A stretch of 63,992 nucleotides of DNA, counting the filler, from Octopus bimaculoides (lineage: Eukaryota): NCBI RefSeq assembly GCF_001194135.2. It is 6 parts of 6 records of this genome, joined end to end, with 100 filler letters (N's around TTAATTAATTAA, not from the genome) between each part and the next. Parts side by side here need not be neighbours in the genome. Positions count along the whole stretch, not along the records: positions 37,192 to 57,308 come from NC_068982.1; 5 more parts are not named here. One strand, 5' to 3'. Below the pieces are notes generated by a model. That model saw nothing but the letters and a program-made list of their open reading frames with translations. It did no database searches and was not told where the DNA came from. The position numbers and the translations under genes are program-made. This document shows, piece after piece, positions 37,714 through 52,699 of this stretch; the stretch's first letter is position 1, and each line of letters begins with the position of its first letter.

Positions 37714-37884
37714 CGGTAGAAACTAATCATACACCCAATGAGCAACATTCCACCAGGTACCTGAAAAGACATTCTGCCAATGAAGTTCTGTAACTCACCA
37801 GAGTCAGGATGGAAGGCAGATAAAACTAGACGATGGGCTTTCAAAACTTGTTCTCGTGTTGTATGTGGAGGTTCCTGTTGCAAC
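37714..37884 (-). CDS. SFXN2: Sideroflexin-2-like coding exon 2: (R)LQQEPPHTTREQVLKAHRLVLSAFHPDSGELQNFIGRMSFQVPGGMLLIGCMISFY(R)
   Basis: Acceptor ttcttttttgtag| and donor ACCG|gtaagt. The exon is 171 nt, phase 2 to 2. It contains the sideroflexin signature SAFHPD.GE.QN.IGRMSFQVPGG. Confidence 0.95.
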
Positions 37885-38079
37885 CTACAAAAAAGAATTA
37901 ATTAGGATATGGATGAGAAGAAAAAATGTGCAATGGTAAAGAAATATTAACTTCCAAGCCATATTGGTTTGGTAGAAAGAGCAAGGCATATGCAGCTGTG
38001 TGTGTATGTGTGTGATTGACTATGTGTGTGAGTGTGTCTGTGTCTGTGAAACTGCTGAAAAAAATAAATGAATATATTT

Positions 38080-38460
38080 AAACAGGCACAAGTGTGGTTG
38101 TTGGGTAAGAAGTTTGCTCTCCAATCACATGGTTCCAGGTTCAGTTCCAATGCATGGCACCTTGGGCAAATGTCTTCTACTATAGCCTTGGACTGACCAA
38201 AGTCTTGTGATTGAATTTGGTAGATGGAAACTGCAAGAAGCCCATCACGTGTGTGTATGTTTGTCCCCCACCACTGCTTAACAACTGGTGCTGATGTGTT
38301 TATGTCCCCGTAACTTAGCAATTCAGCAAAAGGGACCAACAGAAAAAGTACCAGGCTTTACAAAGAATAAGTACTGGGATCGATAAGTACAACTACAATT
38401 CTTTAAGGCAGTGATCCAGTATGGCCACAGTCTAATGACTGAAACAAGTAAAAGATAAAA
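38080..38460 (+). mobile_element. tRNA-derived SINE inside the SFXN2 intron
   Basis: Colinear with the 52290 copy but with most CpGs converted to TpG or CpA. Confidence 0.85.
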
Positions 38461-38519
38461 GATAAAATTCATATATGTACCCATGCACATAACAAAAAAA
38501 GAAAAGAAATCTTACTTGC

Positions 38520-38671
38520 CTGTATTTATTTACAAGATCTCTAGCTTCAAAGAGTTTACTTGTTGGTGTTAAACACGTGGATGGGTTTGTAACCCAAGCA
38601 AAATACTTTAGACGGCCATAAAATGTGTCTTGGTTCCATAGAGGTTTGTCGAGGTCTATTCGGTCAGACAT
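38520..38671 (-). CDS. SFXN2: Sideroflexin-2-like first coding exon: MSDRIDLDKPLWNQDTFYGRLKYFAWVTNPSTCLTPTSKLFEARDLVNKY(R)
   Basis: ATG at 38671. The sideroflexin N-terminal motif (P.W.Q.TF.GR..YF.W.T.P) is present, and the YFAW..P wording resembles invertebrate Sfxn2. Frame continuity with exon 2 at the conserved intron position needs the donor AG|gcaagt. A likely acceptor at 38694 (aattag|GTG) implies 22 nt of 5' UTR and an upstream non-coding exon. Confidence 0.92.
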
Positions 38672-38734
38672 TCTTCTCTTTTGTTCCTGGCACCTAATTT
38701 TTATAGAAACATTAAATGCAATTAATTAATTTTT

Positions 38735-38772
<38 letters not shown>

Positions 38773-38974
38773 GGTGGTGGTGGTAGTAGTAGTAGTAGTA
38801 ATATTTCTGAGTTCAAATTCTGCCAAGGTCAACTTTGCTAGCTTTTCAGGGTCAATAGAATAAGTACCAGGATTGATAAAGTACCAGGGTCAATGTAATT
38901 GACTTAACCCCTCCCCAAAGTTGCTGGCCTTGTGCCAAAATTTGAAATCATTATTATTATTATTATTGTTATTC

Positions 38975-41170: not shown

Positions 41171-44100
41171 TGAAACCAAGGACTTGTGGCCGTTGCCAGT
41201 AAGACATTCGAGTGAGATCGTTGCCAGTGCCACTGAACTGGCTCTTGTGCAGGTGGCACACAAAATACACCATTTTGAGCATGGCCGTGCAGGTGGCACG
41301 TAAAAGCACCCACTACACTCTCGGAGTGGTTGGCATTAGAAAGGGCATCCAGCTGTAGAAACTCTGAGTGGACTGGAGAAACATGAAATGAAGTATTTTG
41401 CTCAAGAACACAATGCATTGCCCCGTCCAGGAACTGAAACCACAATCTTACGATCATGAGTCCAACACCCTAACCACTAAGCCACACGCCTCCACCATGG
41501 TCAAGAGTGGAATGTCTTTAAGTCAACTGGATCGTTGCAGACATGGGGCCAAACAATAACAACTACCACCACTACCACTACCATCATCCAACACCACAAC
41601 CACTGCCGTTGCTGCTCCCACCACCATCACTACCTGAAAATAGGAGAGAAAATATGAATTGAAATAAAAATACAAAGTAGTTTATTTCATTTTTCTGTTA
41701 CTTGTTATCTGCTTAACTAGAGTGTAAAATCAATGACAACTGAAGGTATTGTTTAGTGATAACAAGTCTGGGGTTACGGTGGTGCCAATTTTGTTGTTGT
41801 TGTTGTTGTCATTAATGCTGTTGTTGTTAATGATAAAATAATAACTATGAAGACAATAACAAAGATTCCAGTAGCTTTATTATCATCAGGGTTGCAATAA
41901 CTAATCAGAATGATGATAGTGATGATGATGGTGATAATGATAGTGGTGATGGTGGTAGTGGTGGTGATGATAATGATGGTAAAGACAATGATGATAATTA
42001 TGAGTGATAAAGATGATGATGATGATGATGAAGAGGACTGCTACGGAGTTAACACTGATGAAGGCGATGGGAAAATTTTCGTATAATTCACTGCAAAACT
42101 TCTTAAAAGAAATCCAGCTGTCCCCAATCAATACATTGATTTTTGTTCTTTCGTCTTTCACTCTTGGCATAGAGGCAGAAATGGAATTTATCCATCAAAT
42201 GAGAGGAGATGCTTTGGTAAGAATGAGGAAAATCAGAGCATTTCTGTAAATCAGTTTAATGGACAAAGCAGACTGATTCAGAAATATTGGTGAAAATAAC
42301 TAAAATAGTACAACACATACTTGGATGTTTCTGTTTTGTATGATAATGCAGTGCAGTGCAGCCATGATTATTATTATTGTTATTGTTATTATTGTTGTTG
42401 TTAATCTGCTGCTACTAACGATATGAGTAAAAACCAAATGTTGGTTAACTATGCTTTCTCTTCATGAAGATTATACTTACCTACCTACCTACCTATACAT
42501 GCACACACACACACACACACACACACAGAGGCATGGCTGTGTGGCAAGAAACTTGCTTACCAGCCACATGGTTTCAGGTTCAGTTATACTGCATGCCACC
42601 TAGAATAAGTCCTGGGGTCGATTTGTTCAACTAAAGGCGGTGCTCACCAGTTGAAGTGAGAAAGACCAGTGGAGTGTACCTTACACAAAAAAAATACACA
42701 AAAACAAGGAAGAGTTGGCATCAAGAAGGCCATACAACTGTAGGATACTGGCTCAAGGAGTCTTGTATAAACCAAATTCAGCATGGAAAAAAGCAGGTGG
42801 TAATGAAACAATGATGATGATGATATATATGTATTTTAGGCTTAGAATTTCACTTCATAACCATGTAATTCAGGTTCAGTCCTACTGCATGACACCATTG
42901 GCAAGTGTCTTCTACTATAGCCCTGGGCTGACTAAAGCTTTGTGAGTGGGTCTGAAAGATAGAAACATTATATATATCATCATCATCATCATTTAATATC
43001 TACTTTTCTATGCTTCCATGGTCAGACAGAATTTGCTGAGGCAGGATTTTTACAACCTGATGCCCTTCTTGTTGCCAGCTTTTATCTGTTTCAGTATGGT
43101 AGTATTTCGAGAATATATTTCTATGGAAATTAAAAGTTTCTAATCTCAAATTGTAGTGATGTGAATCAGGGCAATTTTGAAGAAGAGAGATTTAAAGATG
43201 TCAATACTACAAGTCACTATAAGTTTATAAATGAGCCAACACACCCCAGTAGTAACATATTACATTTAACCAGTTAGCATTTAAACAGGCCATAGCCAGC
43301 CCAAATATGCTACCTGTTTTATGTTCAAACCAGCCAGATCTGGCCTCCCACACTCACTCTACAATGTCATTCTAAAAATAAACAATCACATCATTAATAT
43401 CTTGAAGCTATGAAACAATGCATGATTAATGTAAAACAATGTGAACAAATAAGTAGGACATTTGATAGAGTAATCTGAATACTAAACTGCTAATCTTTAC
43501 AAATAACCCATTTCTTATCTCTAAAACTTGTAATGAGTGACACTAATAAAGTCTCTGATCGTTTTGGTATAATTTTTGAGATTATGAGAAAAAATAATTG
43601 TCATTAGTTCTACTTCCTAAAAATCATTATCTTCATTTTCTTAAAGCTTATTACCATTGTATTTCTTAAAAATTCACAAATATAAATTAGCCTCAATATT
43701 TTCCTTCTTGGAAATTTGTAAAAATTTTTGATAATATTATTTAATATTTGTTTTACTTTAAGGCAGTGAACTGGCAGAATCATAAGCATGTTGGGCGAAA
43801 TGTTTAGCAGCATTTTGTCTGCCTTCACATTCTGAGTCCAAATTCCACCGATGTTGACTTTGCCTTTCATCCTTTTAGAGCTGATAAACTAGGTACCAGA
43901 TGAGTACTGGAGTTGATGTAATCAAGTTACCCCTCCCCTGAAATTGTTAGCCTTGAGCCAAAATTTGAAATCCCTAAAACCATATTAAAAGGTTATCAGA
44001 TACTGTAAAAGTGCAAAGAAAAAAAAACAGTAGCAACTTACCATTCATGAAACTCTATGCCCTTGAATCAGTTTATAATTTTTATTGAATAAAAATAACC

Positions 44101-44923: not shown

Positions 44924-44970
44924 ATGCATGCATATATACATACACATATATATATATAGATAGGTAGATA

Positions 44971-45626
44971 GATATAGGGTAAAAATTAATAATTAATTAA
45001 TAATTGGTAATTTTACCAAGTAGTTTGGTGTGTTAAAAAACCATTATCGGTAAACTTATATAAGCATAATTAAAATTAGGGTTCATCAAGAATTGCTTCA
45101 CCACACACCGAAAATTAGAAATAGCAGTCAAAACTATTATTTCTGTACCAAAATATAACTCCCAGACAGCAATACTTGCAATCACAAAGGCAAAAAAGGA
45201 AAAAATAACGAAATCACCCGACTTTGATTAACTGTATACGTGTTTCAGGATGACAAGAGGTGTAAATTATATTACCCGAACTAACCTTCCTTCATCAGTA
45301 CAGTATTTCAAAATTATAAATCCAAGAATGCTAATAAAAGAATAATTAATTCGATCCGGCGACCTCAAATGATTATCCAGGAACAGCATTTCCAAATTCA
45401 TATAGACGAGTAAGGAAATCGTATCATTCCTCAATTACCCACGTGCACTACGAGTAATCCCGCAGAAACTGCAGTTTACTAATTTTCGGTGTGTGGTGAA
45501 GTAATTCTTACTGAACTCTAATTTTAATTATGTTTATATAAGTTTACCGATAATGGTTTTTTAACACACTGAACTACTTGGTAAAATTACTAATTATTAA
45601 TTAATTATTAATTTTTACCCTATATC
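44971..45626. mobile_element. MITE with about 160-bp terminal inverted repeats
   Basis: gatatagggtaaaaattaataattaattaat...cacaccgaaaattag pairs with ctaattttcggtgtg...attaattaattattaatttttaccctatatc. Confidence 0.88.
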
Positions 45627-45763
45627 TGTAAGAATTTATTTACTCCCTGATAGTAAACTGCAGTTTCTGCGGGATTACTCGTGTAATTATTTGGTGTCCA
45701 ATGAAGTAAAGATACGAATAAGTGAGCTGGCTACACTTCTGGCAGAGGTCACAGATTATGCTC

Positions 45764-45998
45764 TCACTTGCCTTGCCGAGTCTTCTCACGTACAGCATAT
45801 TTCCAAATGTCCCGGTCACTGGTCATTGACTCGGTGAGGCCTAAAGTTCGAAGGTCGTGCTTCACCACCTCATCCCAGGTCTTCCTGGGTCTACCTCTTC
45901 CACAGGTTCCCTCAACTGCTAGGGTGTGGCACTTTTTCACACAGCTATCCTCATCCATTCTTGCCACATGTCCATACCAGCGCAATCGTCTCTCCTGC
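45764..45998 (-). mobile_element. RTE-clade LINE 3' end (runs into a gap)
   Basis: Uninterrupted frame QERRLRWYGHVARMDEDSCVKKC...RGRPRKTW, containing the RLRW.GHV.RM and GRPR..W motifs. Confidence 0.9.
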
Positions 45999-46753
45999 NN
46001 NNNNNNNNNNNNNNNNNNNNNNNNNNNNNNNNNNNNNNNNNNNNNNNNNNNNNNNNNNNNNNNNNNNNNNNNNNNNNNNNNNNNNNNNNNNNNNNNNNNN
46101 NNNNNNNNNNNNNNNNNNNNNNNNNNNNNNNNNNNNNNNNNNNNNNNNNNNNNNNNNNNNNNNNNNNNNNNNNNNNNNNNNNNNNNNNNNNNNNNNNNNN
46201 NNNNNNNNNNNNNNNNNNNNNNNNNNNNNNNNNNNNNNNNNNNNNNNNNNNNNNNNNNNNNNNNNNNNNNNNNNNNNNNNNNNNNNNNNNNNNNNNNNNN
46301 NNNNNNNNNNNNNNNNNNNNNNNNNNNNNNNNNNNNNNNNNNNNNNNNNNNNNNNNNNNNNNNNNNNNNNNGGAGTGTGGCAAAGGTTGTTTTCTGCACA
46401 TTTTCAGTGTTTATTGCTCCTGAGCATCTGCCACATACAAAAACTATCTTGCTAGTTAACCTTCCTTTGATATTGCTACACCTCTTATGTGTCCATAGCT
46501 TACACTGGGTACATCTTATGGAGTTTCTACCTACGTCTTTTCTACAGATCGAAAACTATTTTCATTTACATGTATTCTATGTAATCTCAACAACCAACTA
46601 TAGTTATTTGAAAGACACTACTCTACAATGACCAGGTTTCATTAGAAACTGAAAATAGTTTCACACTTTCAATTTCAACCAAAATTACAGTGTTGCATTA
46701 CAGGAGTGACGATGTTTCAATAATGAAAATAATGTTTTGCCAAATTAATCACA

Positions 46754-48723: not shown

Positions 48724-48968
48724 TCCTCTTAAAGGGATATAAGCATTCAAGTTCCCAAGTTATATCCAGTGTATCAGTGAAAAACCAAAAGATGTTAGTT
48801 TCGCATTGATGGATAGAGGTAAATTATCCTTTATGTATGAGAAAAAGAAAACGGAGAAATTGACATAGAGATATCAATTTATTAAAACAAATTCAATTCT
48901 GAACAATATCAAACTCATAGAACCTACAGTTGTTTGATATTGTTTTTCCGTAACCCTAAACACGCGGG

Positions 48969-49039
48969 TTAGGGATAGGGTTAGGGATAGGGTTAGGGTT
49001 AGGGACAGGGTTAGGGTTAGGGATAGGGATAGGGTTAGG
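48969..49039 (+). repeat. Interstitial telomere-like repeat (TTAGGG with ATAGGG/ACAGGG variants), about 12 units
   Basis: Direct reading: ttagggatagggttagggatagggttagggttagggacagggttagggttagggatagggatagggttagg. Confidence 0.9.
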
Positions 49040-52000
49040 ATCGACCACTCAAGACTAGCTAGCGCGGACGCGCGACTGCGCGTTCGGGTCCGCGCTGCTT
49101 TAGTAGTAACCTAAATTTAAAGTACAGTTAACCTCTGTATAACAGATTTCGGATTTAACACATCGGATAATAATAACAATACATTGACAAATAATGATTT
49201 TAATTATATGAATGGTGAGCTGTAGGTATAAATTTGAGAGACGGAGAAAGAGGTGGGAGAGAAATGTTGCATAGAGCAATATGGAAAGGTGGGGGTGACG
49301 AAGCACAAAAACAATAAAAAGCAACTAACAGAAAAGAAAGACGGTAAAGAACGGCCAAGATAAAATGTTATGTATGAGCGAGAGATCGTAAAAGTAAGAT
49401 CATGCAAACGTGTGTGTGAGTGAGAAATTGTAAAAGTAAGATTATGCAAACATATGTGTGTGAGTGAGAGAGAGAGAAGGGGGGGGGTCTCCTAGGTTAC
49501 GGTTTCCTTCAATTTAATGAACTTTCGATATTATTTGACACGCTTTCTCTCCCATTGGGGTTTTTATTGTATTTTCTGTTTTATTTCTTTTAACGACGTT
49601 GAAATAAGAAATAACTCTAAAATTTTAATATAATTAGTCTTAATTAGTGACGAAACAATAAGCAGGACTTTCTTTAGTATCTATACATGATTGTGGATAG
49701 TTTGCACAAAACATCGAGATATCGTTTCGTGGTTGTCTGTATACAATTAAGAAGAAATAGATCACATTTGTTGCGTGCTTTCTATATTGTTATCTTCAAG
49801 TAAATCTCCTGCAAATTTTGGCTGACAGAATCAGTAAAGTAAATGTCTTGTGATATTATTTAGTTATGCCAGTGTCCGTTCTAAATTCAAATAATCCTGG
49901 TGTCGACTTTGCATTTCATTATTACGGTAGAAGTACAGGGTCGATGTCATCGCTTTTTATCTTCCCACCAAATCTATAGACTTATACCAATGCCAGGAAT
50001 TATTAGTTTAGATGTTCTAAGTAGATTACAACCGTTATGTTTACACACACACCGCGCTTATGTCTATTGGATCCATGCGAATTGAACACCCCCCCCCCAC
50101 CAACCTATGACAGCGTGCGGGTACGTGTGGAAAATATGTGAATGCATGCTTAGCACTTTAAATAACTAGGTCTCTGAAACACGCATTATGACCATCTTAG
50201 AAAATAGACGAGATTATAACAGTGCATGTTGATCATTCACTTGTATTAGTATTTATAATTCCAATATACTAATAGTTAAAAACACACCGTTAGATTATTT
50301 AGAGCATACCGGTTATGTAAGGTTTCATCTCTGATAAATTACGATGTTCAAAAGTTGGTAAGCATTAATCAAAAGATAAAGTGTAACAGTGAAAGGGAAC
50401 ATAACTGAAATAAACATTATTCTACATAAAAGACATTAGGACACACGGACCAATTATGCTAATTGCATTACCGTGTCTTCAACATTGGACGTGATCATAA
50501 GTGTATCTATTTCAATTCAAACACGCAAAGTAGTTACCTTATATACACAGACACGTATGGGTACATTCGTGTGTGCGTGTGTGTGCGCGCGTGCATGCGT
50601 GGGTGGGTTGCGTCATACGAAATACTTTGCTGTATTTCTTCCGGCTCGTTACGTTCTGAGTTCAAAACCTGTTGACATTGCCTTTTATCTTTTTGGGGTC
50701 GATAAAATAAGTACTCCTCCGGTACTGGTTTCCTAAGTGACGATGTTATTCGCCTTCTTTTTTTTTTATCCTAGTGGTTGTGTTGGTGAATGACGTCGTC
50801 TAATACCAAAGGATTACCGACTTAGCCCTTCCGCTCAAAACTGCTAGCCTTGTGCCAAAATTTGAAATATTTCAATTTAATCACAAGATAATTTACATTA
50901 TACACACATACACACACACGTGTGTGTGTGAGTGCATGTGAGTGTGAGTGCATGTGAGTGTGAGTGCATGTGAGTGCGTGCACGGTTTCATACAAATTGC
51001 GTTGCTATTAAAGTGCCAGCCAAATATTGGAGGCTAACCCTGCCACCAAATTTGCTAGCCGTGTGCCAAAATTTGAAACTATTATCATTAATACGCAGCG
51101 GACAAAATGCTTAGCGGCATTTCTTCCGGGGTTTATGTTCTGTGTTCAAATCGTACGGAGCTCAACTCGTCTTTCATCCTTTAGAGATCAATAAAATAAG
51201 GTACCAGTCAAGTACTTGAGGTACCGGCAAATCTCTCAAATTTGCTGGCCTTGTGCCAACATTCCAAACATTATTATCAGTAATAAATGTTCACAATGAA
51301 ATTTTGCCGATTGCTGGTTTCTCAAGACACCACAATCATTGTATCGAGTTCTTTATCCAGTGACTGTACAAAGGTTTACGAACCTATACAATAAACAAAT
51401 GTACGTATGTGTGAATATATATGTTCAGGTACGCATGAACAGGTATGTACATATATGTAGGTATGTACATATATGTAGGTATGTGTACGTTTGTACGTAT
51501 GCGTGTTTCTGTGTGTAGAAGAAAGAAAGCCAGCAAAAGAGGGAACCTGAATGTGATTGCTTGACCAGCTATCCAAATCTCCCTCAAATCATACACCCTA
51601 CTGTCTTTTATAAAGTGAACGGACATTGAACTAATAATGTGGTCCTTACTCCAACTGCTGTTCGATCTGAGCTGGACAACGATTAGCCGAAGGTTCCTAT
51701 TGTCTTACAAAAAAAAAAAAAACCAATGACACGTTGGATTATGTCGTTTTAGATATATCGTATCTGAACACAAGTTGAATGGGCCAAAACAAGGTACAAG
51801 AAAGGAAAAGCCCACTTACCGTGCCTGAAGGTGACTGCTGACTGTTGAAAGTAACACTACAGTTATCTCCCTGCTACTATTGACTGATACATACGCACGC
51901 GTTTAGCATCATTTATCTAAAGTTGCTTCATGTCAATTAGACTGATTCACAACTTCATCCACTGCGCTGTGACAATTATGGAGAGAAATAGATAAATCGC

Positions 52001-52258: not shown

Positions 52259-52289
<31 letters not shown>

Positions 52290-52593
52290 GGCGTAGGAGT
52301 GGCTGTGTGGTAAGTAGCTTGCTTACCGACCACATGGTTCCGGGTTCAGTCCCACTGCGTGGCACCTTGGGCAAGTGTCTTCTACTATAGCCTCGGGCCG
52401 ACCAAAGCCTTGTGAGTGGATTTGGTAGACGGAAACTGAAAGAAGCCCGTCGTATATATGTATATATAGGTATATATATGTTTGTGTGTCTGTGTTTGAC
52501 AACCGATGCTGGTGTGTTTATGTCCCCGTAACTTAGCGGTTCGGCAAACGAGACCGAAAGAATAAGTACTAGGCTTACAAAGAATAAGTCCTG
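52290..52593 (+). mobile_element. CpG-intact tRNA-derived SINE (truncated by a gap)
   Basis: ggcgtaggagtggctgtgtggtaag...ggttcagtcc (A-box- and B-box-like head), colinear with the other family copies. Confidence 0.9.
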
Positions 52594-52699
52594 NNNNNNN
52601 NNNNNNNNNNNNNNNNNNNNNNNNNNNNNNNNNNNNNNNNNNNNNNNNNNNNNNNNNNNNNNNNNNNNNNNNNNNNNNNNNNNNNNNNNNNNNNNNNNN

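What the first reader, a model, noticed from the sequence alone, without database searches (positions are those of the whole stretch)
38511..38525. SFXN2 intron appears to use a GC donor with a competing GT donor 4 nt downstream
The minus strand reads TAC AG|GCAAGTAAG. The next exon (acceptor tttgtag|G TTG CAA CAG GAA CCT CCA) needs a phase-2 junction, and only the GC donor (AG|gcaagt, the usual strong GC-donor context) supplies it. That gives YR-LQQE-PP, the same spacing as human SFXN2 SR-MGVV-PP. Using the GT 4 nt later (CAA|gtaaga) with the same acceptor shifts the frame to a TGA inside exon 2. It could be rescued only by a second AG 10 nt downstream, giving YRQEPP (2 residues shorter). This could be a frame-switch or NMD-coupled splicing control in a mitochondrial carrier gene. 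It will also make GT-only gene predictors mis-annotate the locus.
Basis: partly seen in the sequence, partly recalled or inferred. Interest (0 to 1): 0.7.

Follow-up and report, generated by a model that had tools for sequence, protein, structure and literature searches.

The report
Ordinary GC-AG intron in sideroflexin gene
The first coding intron of a sideroflexin (SFXN2-like) gene most likely starts with GC instead of the usual GT, a known minority intron type found in about 1% of animal introns. The "competing" GT four bases later is simply part of the normal splice-site consensus, so this matters mainly for correct gene annotation.

Summary
The minus strand reads TAC AG|GCAAGTAAGA, with G38519 and C38518. 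A GT lies 4 nt downstream (38515-38514). There are two AGs, at 37886-37885 and 37876-37875.

Only GC38519 joined to AG37885 keeps the register seen across the sideroflexin family:
- Anchor distance is 61 residues in 41 of 58 homologues. None has 59, the distance the GT+4 product gives.
- It rebuilds the conserved Arg codon, AG|G.

The same intron position and phase occur in a bivalve, a bird and two other eukaryotes. All four use GT there, so the GC is a derived T>C change, or less likely an assembly error or polymorphism.

The donor CAG|GCAAGT matches the consensus fully except at +2. It pairs with U1 better than the GT+4 site (9/11 pairs and -9.0 kcal/mol, against a broken 8/11 and -1.2).

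A GT at +5/+6 belongs to the donor consensus. About half of constitutive human donors carry a GY there.

GT+4 use would give a known type of event, a delta-4 tandem donor that creates a premature stop. I found no evidence for or against actual use, and no transcript or cephalopod data were reachable.

Verdict: an ordinary GC-AG intron of low interest. The useful part is the warning for annotators.

The parts
38520..38671 (-). Coding exon 1 of a sideroflexin (SFXN2-like) gene. It runs from ATG 38671-38669 to ...AAA TAC AG and ends in phase 2 inside the conserved Arg codon.
   Evidence: The N-terminus MSDRIDLDKPLW aligns with METRIDLDKPIW of Tegillarca (P0001).
38514..38522 (-). GC donor site CAG|GCAAGT (-3..+6). 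Cleavage falls between G38520 and G38519, and C38518 is the non-canonical +2 base.
   Evidence: sequence. (9/11 Watson-Crick pairs with the U1 5' end, -9.0 kcal/mol). (the only junction that keeps the family register).
38510..38518 (-). Overlapping GT+4 site CAA|GTAAGA. Its GT (38515-38514) is also +5/+6 of the GC donor. It is a pseudo-donor or minor donor.
   Evidence: (8/11 pairs, interrupted, -1.2 kcal/mol in register). (frameshift with AG1).
37885..38519 (-). GC-AG intron of 635 nt. It is the first coding intron, at a position and phase shared with bivalve, bird and other homologues.
38074..38358 (-). Interspersed-repeat copy inside the intron, 81-83% identical to 52279-52576.
   Evidence: families D5, D6, D9.
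37887..37905 (-). Branch-point-like CTAAT (branch A at 37902, 17 nt from AG1), then TTAAT and a T-rich tract, upstream of acceptor 1.
   Evidence: This is a motif match only.
37885..37886 (-). Acceptor AG1 (tttttgtAG|G). The exon-2 first base G37884 completes the Arg codon AG|G.
   Evidence: Genomic exon-2 ORFs of many invertebrates read ...R-NHQ/LGQ/NLQ-EPPGTT in the same register.
37875..37876 (-). Second AG (caacAG|GAA), 10 nt inside exon 2. It is in frame only together with the GT+4 donor.
37714..37884 (-). Coding exon 2 (G TTG CAA CAG GAA CCT ... TAC CG). It is followed by a canonical donor CG|GTAAGT (GT at 37713-37712). The rest of the gene is cut off by the edge of the piece.
   Evidence: All family-invariant residues are present (SAFHPDSG, GRMSFQV).
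37804..37806 (-). TGA reached if GT+4 is joined to AG1. It lies 90 nt upstream of the exon-2/exon-3 junction, so it is a predicted NMD-type premature stop.

Best explanation
This is a normal U2-type GC-AG intron, the first coding intron of a sideroflexin-2-like gene. The ancestral GT donor at this ancient intron position changed T>C at +2 in this lineage. Splicing is kept up because every other donor position matches the U1-complementary consensus (CAG|GCAAGT). Cleavage after ...TAC AG and ligation to G37884 rebuilds the conserved Arg codon and yields ...NKYR LQQEPPHTT.... The GT 4 nt downstream is the consensus +5/+6 GT. At most it is a minor, unproductive delta-4 tandem donor.

Shown here: the sequence, the reading frames, the family register, the conserved intron position and the U1 complementarity.

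Inferred: that the spliceosome actually uses the GC site, and that GT+4 use is minor.
For: - Sequence and frames.
- Of 27 in-frame GY...AG combinations around the junction, only GC38519 + AG37885 gives the family register.
- The distance from the N-terminal anchor to SAFHPD is 61 in 41/58 homologues and 59 in 0/58. The GC product has 61 and the GT+4/AG2 product has 59.
- Arg is at -22 in 109/142 homologues and Pro at -17 in 118/142. The GC product matches both.
- Pfam SFXNs scores 124.7 bits for the GC product against 120.4 for GT+4/AG2.
- The same intron position and phase 2 occur in Tegillarca (TACAG|GTTTGT), a Logan invertebrate contig (TATAA|GTACTG), the bird Pterocles (TGCAG|GTGAGG) and a metagenomic eukaryote (GCCAA|GTAAAG).
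- U1 pairing is 9/11 and -9.0 kcal/mol for the GC site, against -1.2 in register for GT+4.
- Literature:
  - GC-AG makes up 0.98% of animal introns (PMC7072748). In human and mouse protein-coding genes it makes up 0.8% overall and 1.2% of first introns (PMC7242645).
  - GC donors sit closer to the consensus than GT donors, and GT>GC conversions are frequent (PMC2490688).
Against: - There is no transcript evidence and no sequence from a closely related species. Use of the GC site is therefore inferred from homology only.
- The junction-adjacent loop has diverged here. Gln replaces the usual Gly at -20 and His replaces Gly at -15, so a 2-residue length change is not strictly excluded.
- The Pfam score difference is only 4.3 bits.
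- The GT+4 site has an intact GTAAG core, which GT-based scoring schemes would rate well.
- The piece is a draft scaffold with N gaps.
Confidence: 0.75

Rival explanations
1. The C at 38518 is an assembly or sequencing error, or a rare allele. The true donor would then be the perfect consensus CAG|GTAAGT at the same position, with the same protein.
For: - All four homologues with this intron use GT.
- The piece comes from a gapped draft scaffold, with N runs at 45999-46371 and 52594-52700.
- One T>C change separates the two states.
Against: - The local sequence is not low-complexity.
- Inference from general knowledge: per-base substitution error in assemblies is usually well below the ~1% prior for real GC-AG introns (PMC7072748).
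- The full consensus at all other positions is just what real GC donors show (PMC2490688).
Confidence: 0.1
2. Both overlapping donors are used in meaningful amounts. GC gives the productive mRNA. GT+4, mostly joined to AG1, gives a frameshifted transcript with a premature stop that NMD degrades. This would be regulated unproductive splicing of the carrier gene.
For: - The GYNNGY architecture is present.
- The premature stop TGA 37806-37804 lies 90 nt upstream of the next exon junction.
- Delta-4 tandem donors are the commonest overlapping 5' splice sites, and most give premature stops of the NMD type. Human RAD9A uses CAG/GCAG/GT at both sites (PMC2423196).
- GC donors are enriched in alternatively spliced genes (PMC2490688, PMC7242645).
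Against: - GY at +5/+6 occurs in about half of constitutive donors without being used (PMC2423196).
- GT+4 has weak U1 pairing, with A at -1 and A at +6.
- There is no sign of conservation or regulation and no transcript data.
- Occasional use would be indistinguishable from splicing noise.
Confidence: 0.1
3. The main mRNA uses the canonical GT at 38515 together with the second AG at 37875. That would give a sideroflexin with YRQEPP, 2 residues shorter.
For: - The product is in frame and uses canonical GT-AG.
- It still scores 120.4 bits against PF03820.
- CAG is a good acceptor trinucleotide.
Against: - 0 of 58 homologues have this spacing.
- It moves the splice junction away from the position and phase conserved in four other lineages.
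- AG2 lies downstream of a well-formed AG1 that has its own T-tract and branch-like motif. AG2 itself is preceded by purine-rich GGTTGCAACAG.
- From general knowledge, the first AG after the branch point is normally chosen.
Confidence: 0.05

Closest known systems
U2-type GC-AG introns (major non-canonical class)
   Same: GC at +1/+2 and AG at the 3' end. All other donor positions match the consensus (CAG|GCAAGT). It is the first coding intron, where GC-AG is enriched in human and mouse (PMC7242645). It aligns with GT-AG introns in homologues, consistent with frequent GT>GC conversion (PMC2490688).
   Different: Nothing structural. Only the gene and lineage are particular, and transcript confirmation is missing here.
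Delta-4 tandem donors (GYNNGY, A5E-delta-4), for example human RAD9A exon 8 CAG/GCAG/GT (PMC2423196)
   Same: A GC donor overlaps a GT donor 4 nt downstream. Use of the other site shifts the frame and creates a premature stop more than 50 nt before the next junction.
   Different: In RAD9A both sites have transcript support. Here use of the second site is unproven, the GC site pairs with U1 much better, and the GC site is the only productive one.
Orthologous sideroflexin first coding intron in other animals (Tegillarca granosa L001, Pterocles gutturalis L004, contigs L003 and L005)
   Same: Same intron position and phase 2 in the Arg/Lys codon before x-G-x-[EV]-P. Exon 2 is homologous from that junction onward.
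   Different: Those introns start with GT (GTTTGT, GTGAGG, GTACTG, GTAAAG). The window has GC. One homologue (L002) has no intron there at all.

Membership tests
U2-type GC-AG intron | Intron begins with GC and ends with AG | tested here: met
   G38519 C38518 ... A37886 G37885
U2-type GC-AG intron | The remaining donor positions sit close to the consensus MAG|GYRAGT, compensating for the +2 mismatch | tested here: met
   CAG|GCAAGT matches 8 of 9 consensus positions. Over -3..+8 it makes 9/11 pairs with the U1 5' end, -9.0 kcal/mol.
U2-type GC-AG intron | The junction restores the reading frame and the homologous protein | tested here: met
   It is the only one of 27 in-frame GY..AG combinations that keeps the family register. 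It scores 124.7 bits against PF03820.
U2-type GC-AG intron | Pyrimidine tract and branch-point-like motif upstream of the AG | tested here: met
   CTAAT with its branch A 17 nt from AG1, followed by TTCTTTTTTGTAG. This is motif-level evidence only.
U2-type GC-AG intron | Spliced transcripts join the two exons at this junction | not testable with these tools
   No RNA-seq or cDNA of the source organism was reachable.
Alternatively used delta-4 tandem donor (NMD-coupled) | GYNNGY motif at the exon end | tested here: met
   GCAAGT. The motif is also present in about half of constitutive donors (PMC2423196), so it does not discriminate.
Alternatively used delta-4 tandem donor (NMD-coupled) | The second site gives a premature stop more than 50 nt upstream of a downstream exon junction | tested here: met
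   TGA 37806-37804 lies 90 nt before the end of exon 2.
Alternatively used delta-4 tandem donor (NMD-coupled) | Transcripts from both donors exist, and the unproductive one rises when NMD is blocked | not testable with these tools
   No transcript data.
Sideroflexin family (PF03820) | Significant match to the family profile with invariant motifs | tested here: met
   124.7 bits, E = 4.6e-36, profile positions 1-103. SAFHPDSG and GRMSFQVPGG are present.
SFXN2 orthologue specifically | Closer to SFXN2 than to the other paralogues | tested here: inconclusive
   All named vertebrate hits are sideroflexin-2. Only 108 N-terminal residues are in the piece and no tree was built.
U12-type (minor) intron | Donor /RTATCCTT and a branch site TCCTTAAC | tested here: not met
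   The donor is GCAAGTAAG.

The most novel reading that the evidence does not exclude
The T>C change created a deliberately weakened productive donor overlapping a canonical but unproductive GT donor. The ratio of GC to GT+4 use would then set the output of this mitochondrial carrier through NMD. A speculative extension for a cephalopod is that A-to-I editing of the A at 38516, the -1 base of the GT+4 site, shifts the balance. None of this is excluded, and none of it is indicated by the data.
Probability: 0.05. Interest if true: 0.4.

Novelty: new member of a known kind. Interest (0 to 1): 0.12.

Why it matters
The value is mainly practical. A gene predictor restricted to GT-AG would take one of three wrong paths at this sideroflexin gene:
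- shift the frame;
- delete two residues (YRQEPP);
- split the gene.

Annotators should allow GC donors here. The locus also gives a clean example of a GT>GC conversion at an intron position conserved between molluscs and vertebrates. It does not open a new mechanistic question unless transcript data show substantial use of the GT+4 site.

Tried and rejected
- Exact look-up of the exon-1 read-through ORF (38432-38671, minus strand) in public assemblies, to find the source or a second copy. Nothing is on record.
- A second protein search with the less conserved residues 1-72, to pull out close (cephalopod) relatives. No candidate shared three 5-residue words. The first search had found nothing above 63% identity over most of the query. 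Conservation of the GC donor within the clade could therefore not be tested.
- A metagenome scan with the exon-1 peptide. It returned one distant eukaryotic homologue (L005, 51% identity) with a GT donor, and no close relative.
- Other canonical GT donors near the exon end, such as CTT|GTAAAT at 38533. In frame only with AG2, it deletes 8 residues relative to the GC product and drops the Pfam score to 98.9 bits. Rejected.
- U12-type intron. Rejected on the donor sequence.
- Processed pseudogene. Rejected, because an intron sits at the conserved position and all invariant residues are intact.
- MaxEntScan-type scoring was not available offline. U1 duplex pairing was used instead.
- ORFs elsewhere in the piece were scanned against Pfam. 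Only transposon-like debris turned up.

Full report
**Observation**

On the minus strand the piece carries the start of a sideroflexin gene. The ATG is at 38671-38669. The reading frame runs to ...GTA AAT AAA TAC AG and is followed by GCAAGTAAGA.
- The G and C of the proposed donor are 38519 and 38518.
- The next GT is 38515-38514.
- Downstream, tttttgtAG (37886-37885) precedes G TTG CAA CAG GAA CCT CCA.
- A second AG lies at 37876-37875.
- Exon 2 ends at 37714 with a canonical CG|GTAAGT.

- GC + AG1 is in frame (YR LQQE PP).
- GT+4 + AG1 runs into a TGA at 37806-37804.
- GT+4 + AG2 is in frame but two residues shorter (YRQEPP).
- GC + AG2 is out of frame.

**What the gene is**

The 108-residue product of exons 1 and 2 matches Pfam PF03820 (Sideroflexins) at 124.7 bits over profile positions 1-103. 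The best named vertebrate relatives are sideroflexin-2. All family-invariant residues in this part (SAFHPDSG, GRMSFQV) are present. The gene therefore looks intact. It continues beyond the edge of the piece.

**Which junction is real: protein register**

I enumerated every GT or GC between 38600 and 38431 against every AG between 37960 and 37801. 27 combinations stay open and land in the exon-2 frame.

Among homologues that carry both a conserved N-terminal anchor (W-D-Q-x-T-F-x-G-R) and the SAFHPD motif, the distance between them is 61 residues in 41 of 58 and 59 in none. The GC + AG1 product has 61 and the GT+4 + AG2 product has 59.

I aligned 142 homologues on SAFHPD. Arg is at -22 in 109 and Pro at -17 in 118, and the GC product matches both. 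The Pfam score favours it by 4.3 bits (124.7 against 120.4). That margin is modest but points the expected way.

One caveat applies. The loop right after the junction has diverged here, with Gln for the usual Gly at -20 and His for Gly at -15. Tolerance of a small length change is therefore not strictly excluded.

**Which junction is real: intron position**

The same intron, in phase 2 within the Arg/Lys codon, is present in four homologues:

| Homologue | Locus | Donor |
|---|---|---|
| Bivalve Tegillarca granosa | L001 | TACAG\|GTTTGT |
| Invertebrate contig from a public sequencing run | L003 | TATAA\|GTACTG (63-nt intron) |
| Bird Pterocles gutturalis SFXN2 | L004 | TGCAG\|GTGAGG |
| Metagenomic eukaryote | L005 | GCCAA\|GTAAAG |

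Many genomic exon-2 ORFs of other invertebrates read straight through the acceptor as ...R-NHQ/LGQ/NLQ-EPPGTT. That is the same register as AG|G TTG CAA CAG GAA CCT here. The junction position is therefore ancient, and only the GC dinucleotide sits at it in the window. All four comparators use GT, so the C is a derived T>C change, or an error.

**Donor strength**

CAG|GCAAGT matches the consensus at every position except +2. In the canonical register it forms 9 of 11 Watson-Crick pairs with the 5' end of U1 (-9.0 kcal/mol). The GT+4 site CAA|GTAAGAUU forms 8 interrupted pairs (-1.2 kcal/mol in register, -4.5 for its best sub-duplex). The U1 sequence is taken from general knowledge. The 9-mer CAGGCAAGT occurs once on both strands of the piece. 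A branch-like CTAAT (A37902, 17 nt from AG1) and a T-tract precede AG1, whereas AG2 is preceded by GGTTGCAACAG.

**The "competing" GT**

The GT four bases after the cleavage site is positions +5/+6 of the donor consensus GTRAGT. In human constitutive exons a GY at that place occurs in about 47-52% of donors (PMC2423196, Table 4 and text). GC donors adhere even more closely to the consensus (PMC2490688). Its presence is therefore expected and is not a signal.

If the site were used, the event would belong to a well-described class. Delta-4 tandem donors are the commonest overlapping 5' splice sites. They nearly always create premature stops, and about three quarters of those are predicted NMD substrates. 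PMC2423196 even documents a GC/GT pair of this type (RAD9A, CAG/GCAG/GT).

Here the premature stop would lie 90 nt before the next junction. The NMD prediction is formally met, but nothing shows that the site is used or regulated.

**How common the class is**

- GC-AG introns make up 0.98% of annotated animal introns (PMC7072748, Table 1).
- They make up 0.8% of introns in human and mouse protein-coding genes, rising to 1.2% in first introns (PMC7242645).
- GT>GC conversions outnumber the reverse in mammals, and switching between the two states among species is frequent (PMC2490688).

A lineage-specific GC at a conserved first coding intron fits this picture exactly.

**Limits**

No transcript data and no close relative could be reached.
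- The exon-1 ORF is not on record.
- The best protein hit over most of the query is 63% identical.
- A search with the less conserved N-terminal part found nothing.
- A metagenome scan gave only one distant homologue.

The piece is a gapped draft scaffold (N runs at 45999-46371 and 52594-52700). A base error or polymorphism at 38518 therefore remains a live but minor alternative. It would not change the gene model.

**Verdict**

This is an ordinary member of a known intron class. It is useful as an annotation warning and of low scientific surprise.

Noticed in passing
window 38074-38358, 52279-52576, 42873-42966: An interspersed (SINE-like) repeat has one copy inside the GC-AG intron. Other copies are 80-83% identical. 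A second short repeat family lies at 38880-38949, 43903-43972 and 51011-51080.
   Followed up: partly
window 45999-46371 and 52594-52700: Runs of N (373 and 107 bases) show that the piece comes from a gapped draft scaffold. This bears on how far a single base can be trusted.
   Followed up: yes
window 48966-49039: About 12 copies of a GGGTTA hexamer at 85% match. This is the reverse complement of the TTAGGG-type telomere unit, so it may be an interstitial telomere-like repeat.
   Followed up: no
window 44970-45121 / 45476-45627: An inverted repeat with 152-nt arms, 94% complementary, 354 nt apart. It could be a foldback or MITE-like element.
   Followed up: no
window 55151-55471 (+), 45764-45998 (-), 52575-53003 (-): Transposon-like ORF debris.
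- 55151-55471 (+): a weak reverse-transcriptase match (RVT_1, E = 0.0023, below the curated cut-off).
- 45764-45998 (-): a retroelement-like C-terminal peptide with no Pfam hit.
- 52575-53003 (-): a C2H2 zinc-finger ORF that runs into an assembly gap.
All.
   Followed up: partly
window 38694-38695 (-): The sequence ttctataaaaattAG|GTGCC lies 22 nt upstream of the ATG and could be the acceptor of a 5'-UTR intron. An (AAT)n microsatellite lies just upstream of it.
   Followed up: no
L002 4001-4492: In one NCBI assembly (GCA_013332995.1) the sideroflexin homologue reads through ...VERYRTGAEPP... with no intron at the position discussed here. That suggests intron loss in that lineage.
   Followed up: partly
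L005 about 800-830: The metagenomic eukaryote's donor region reads CAGGCCAAGTAAAG, which resembles the window's CAGGCAAGTAAG. The frame there requires the canonical GCCAA|GTAAAG site, so the resemblance is probably a coincidence.
   Followed up: partly
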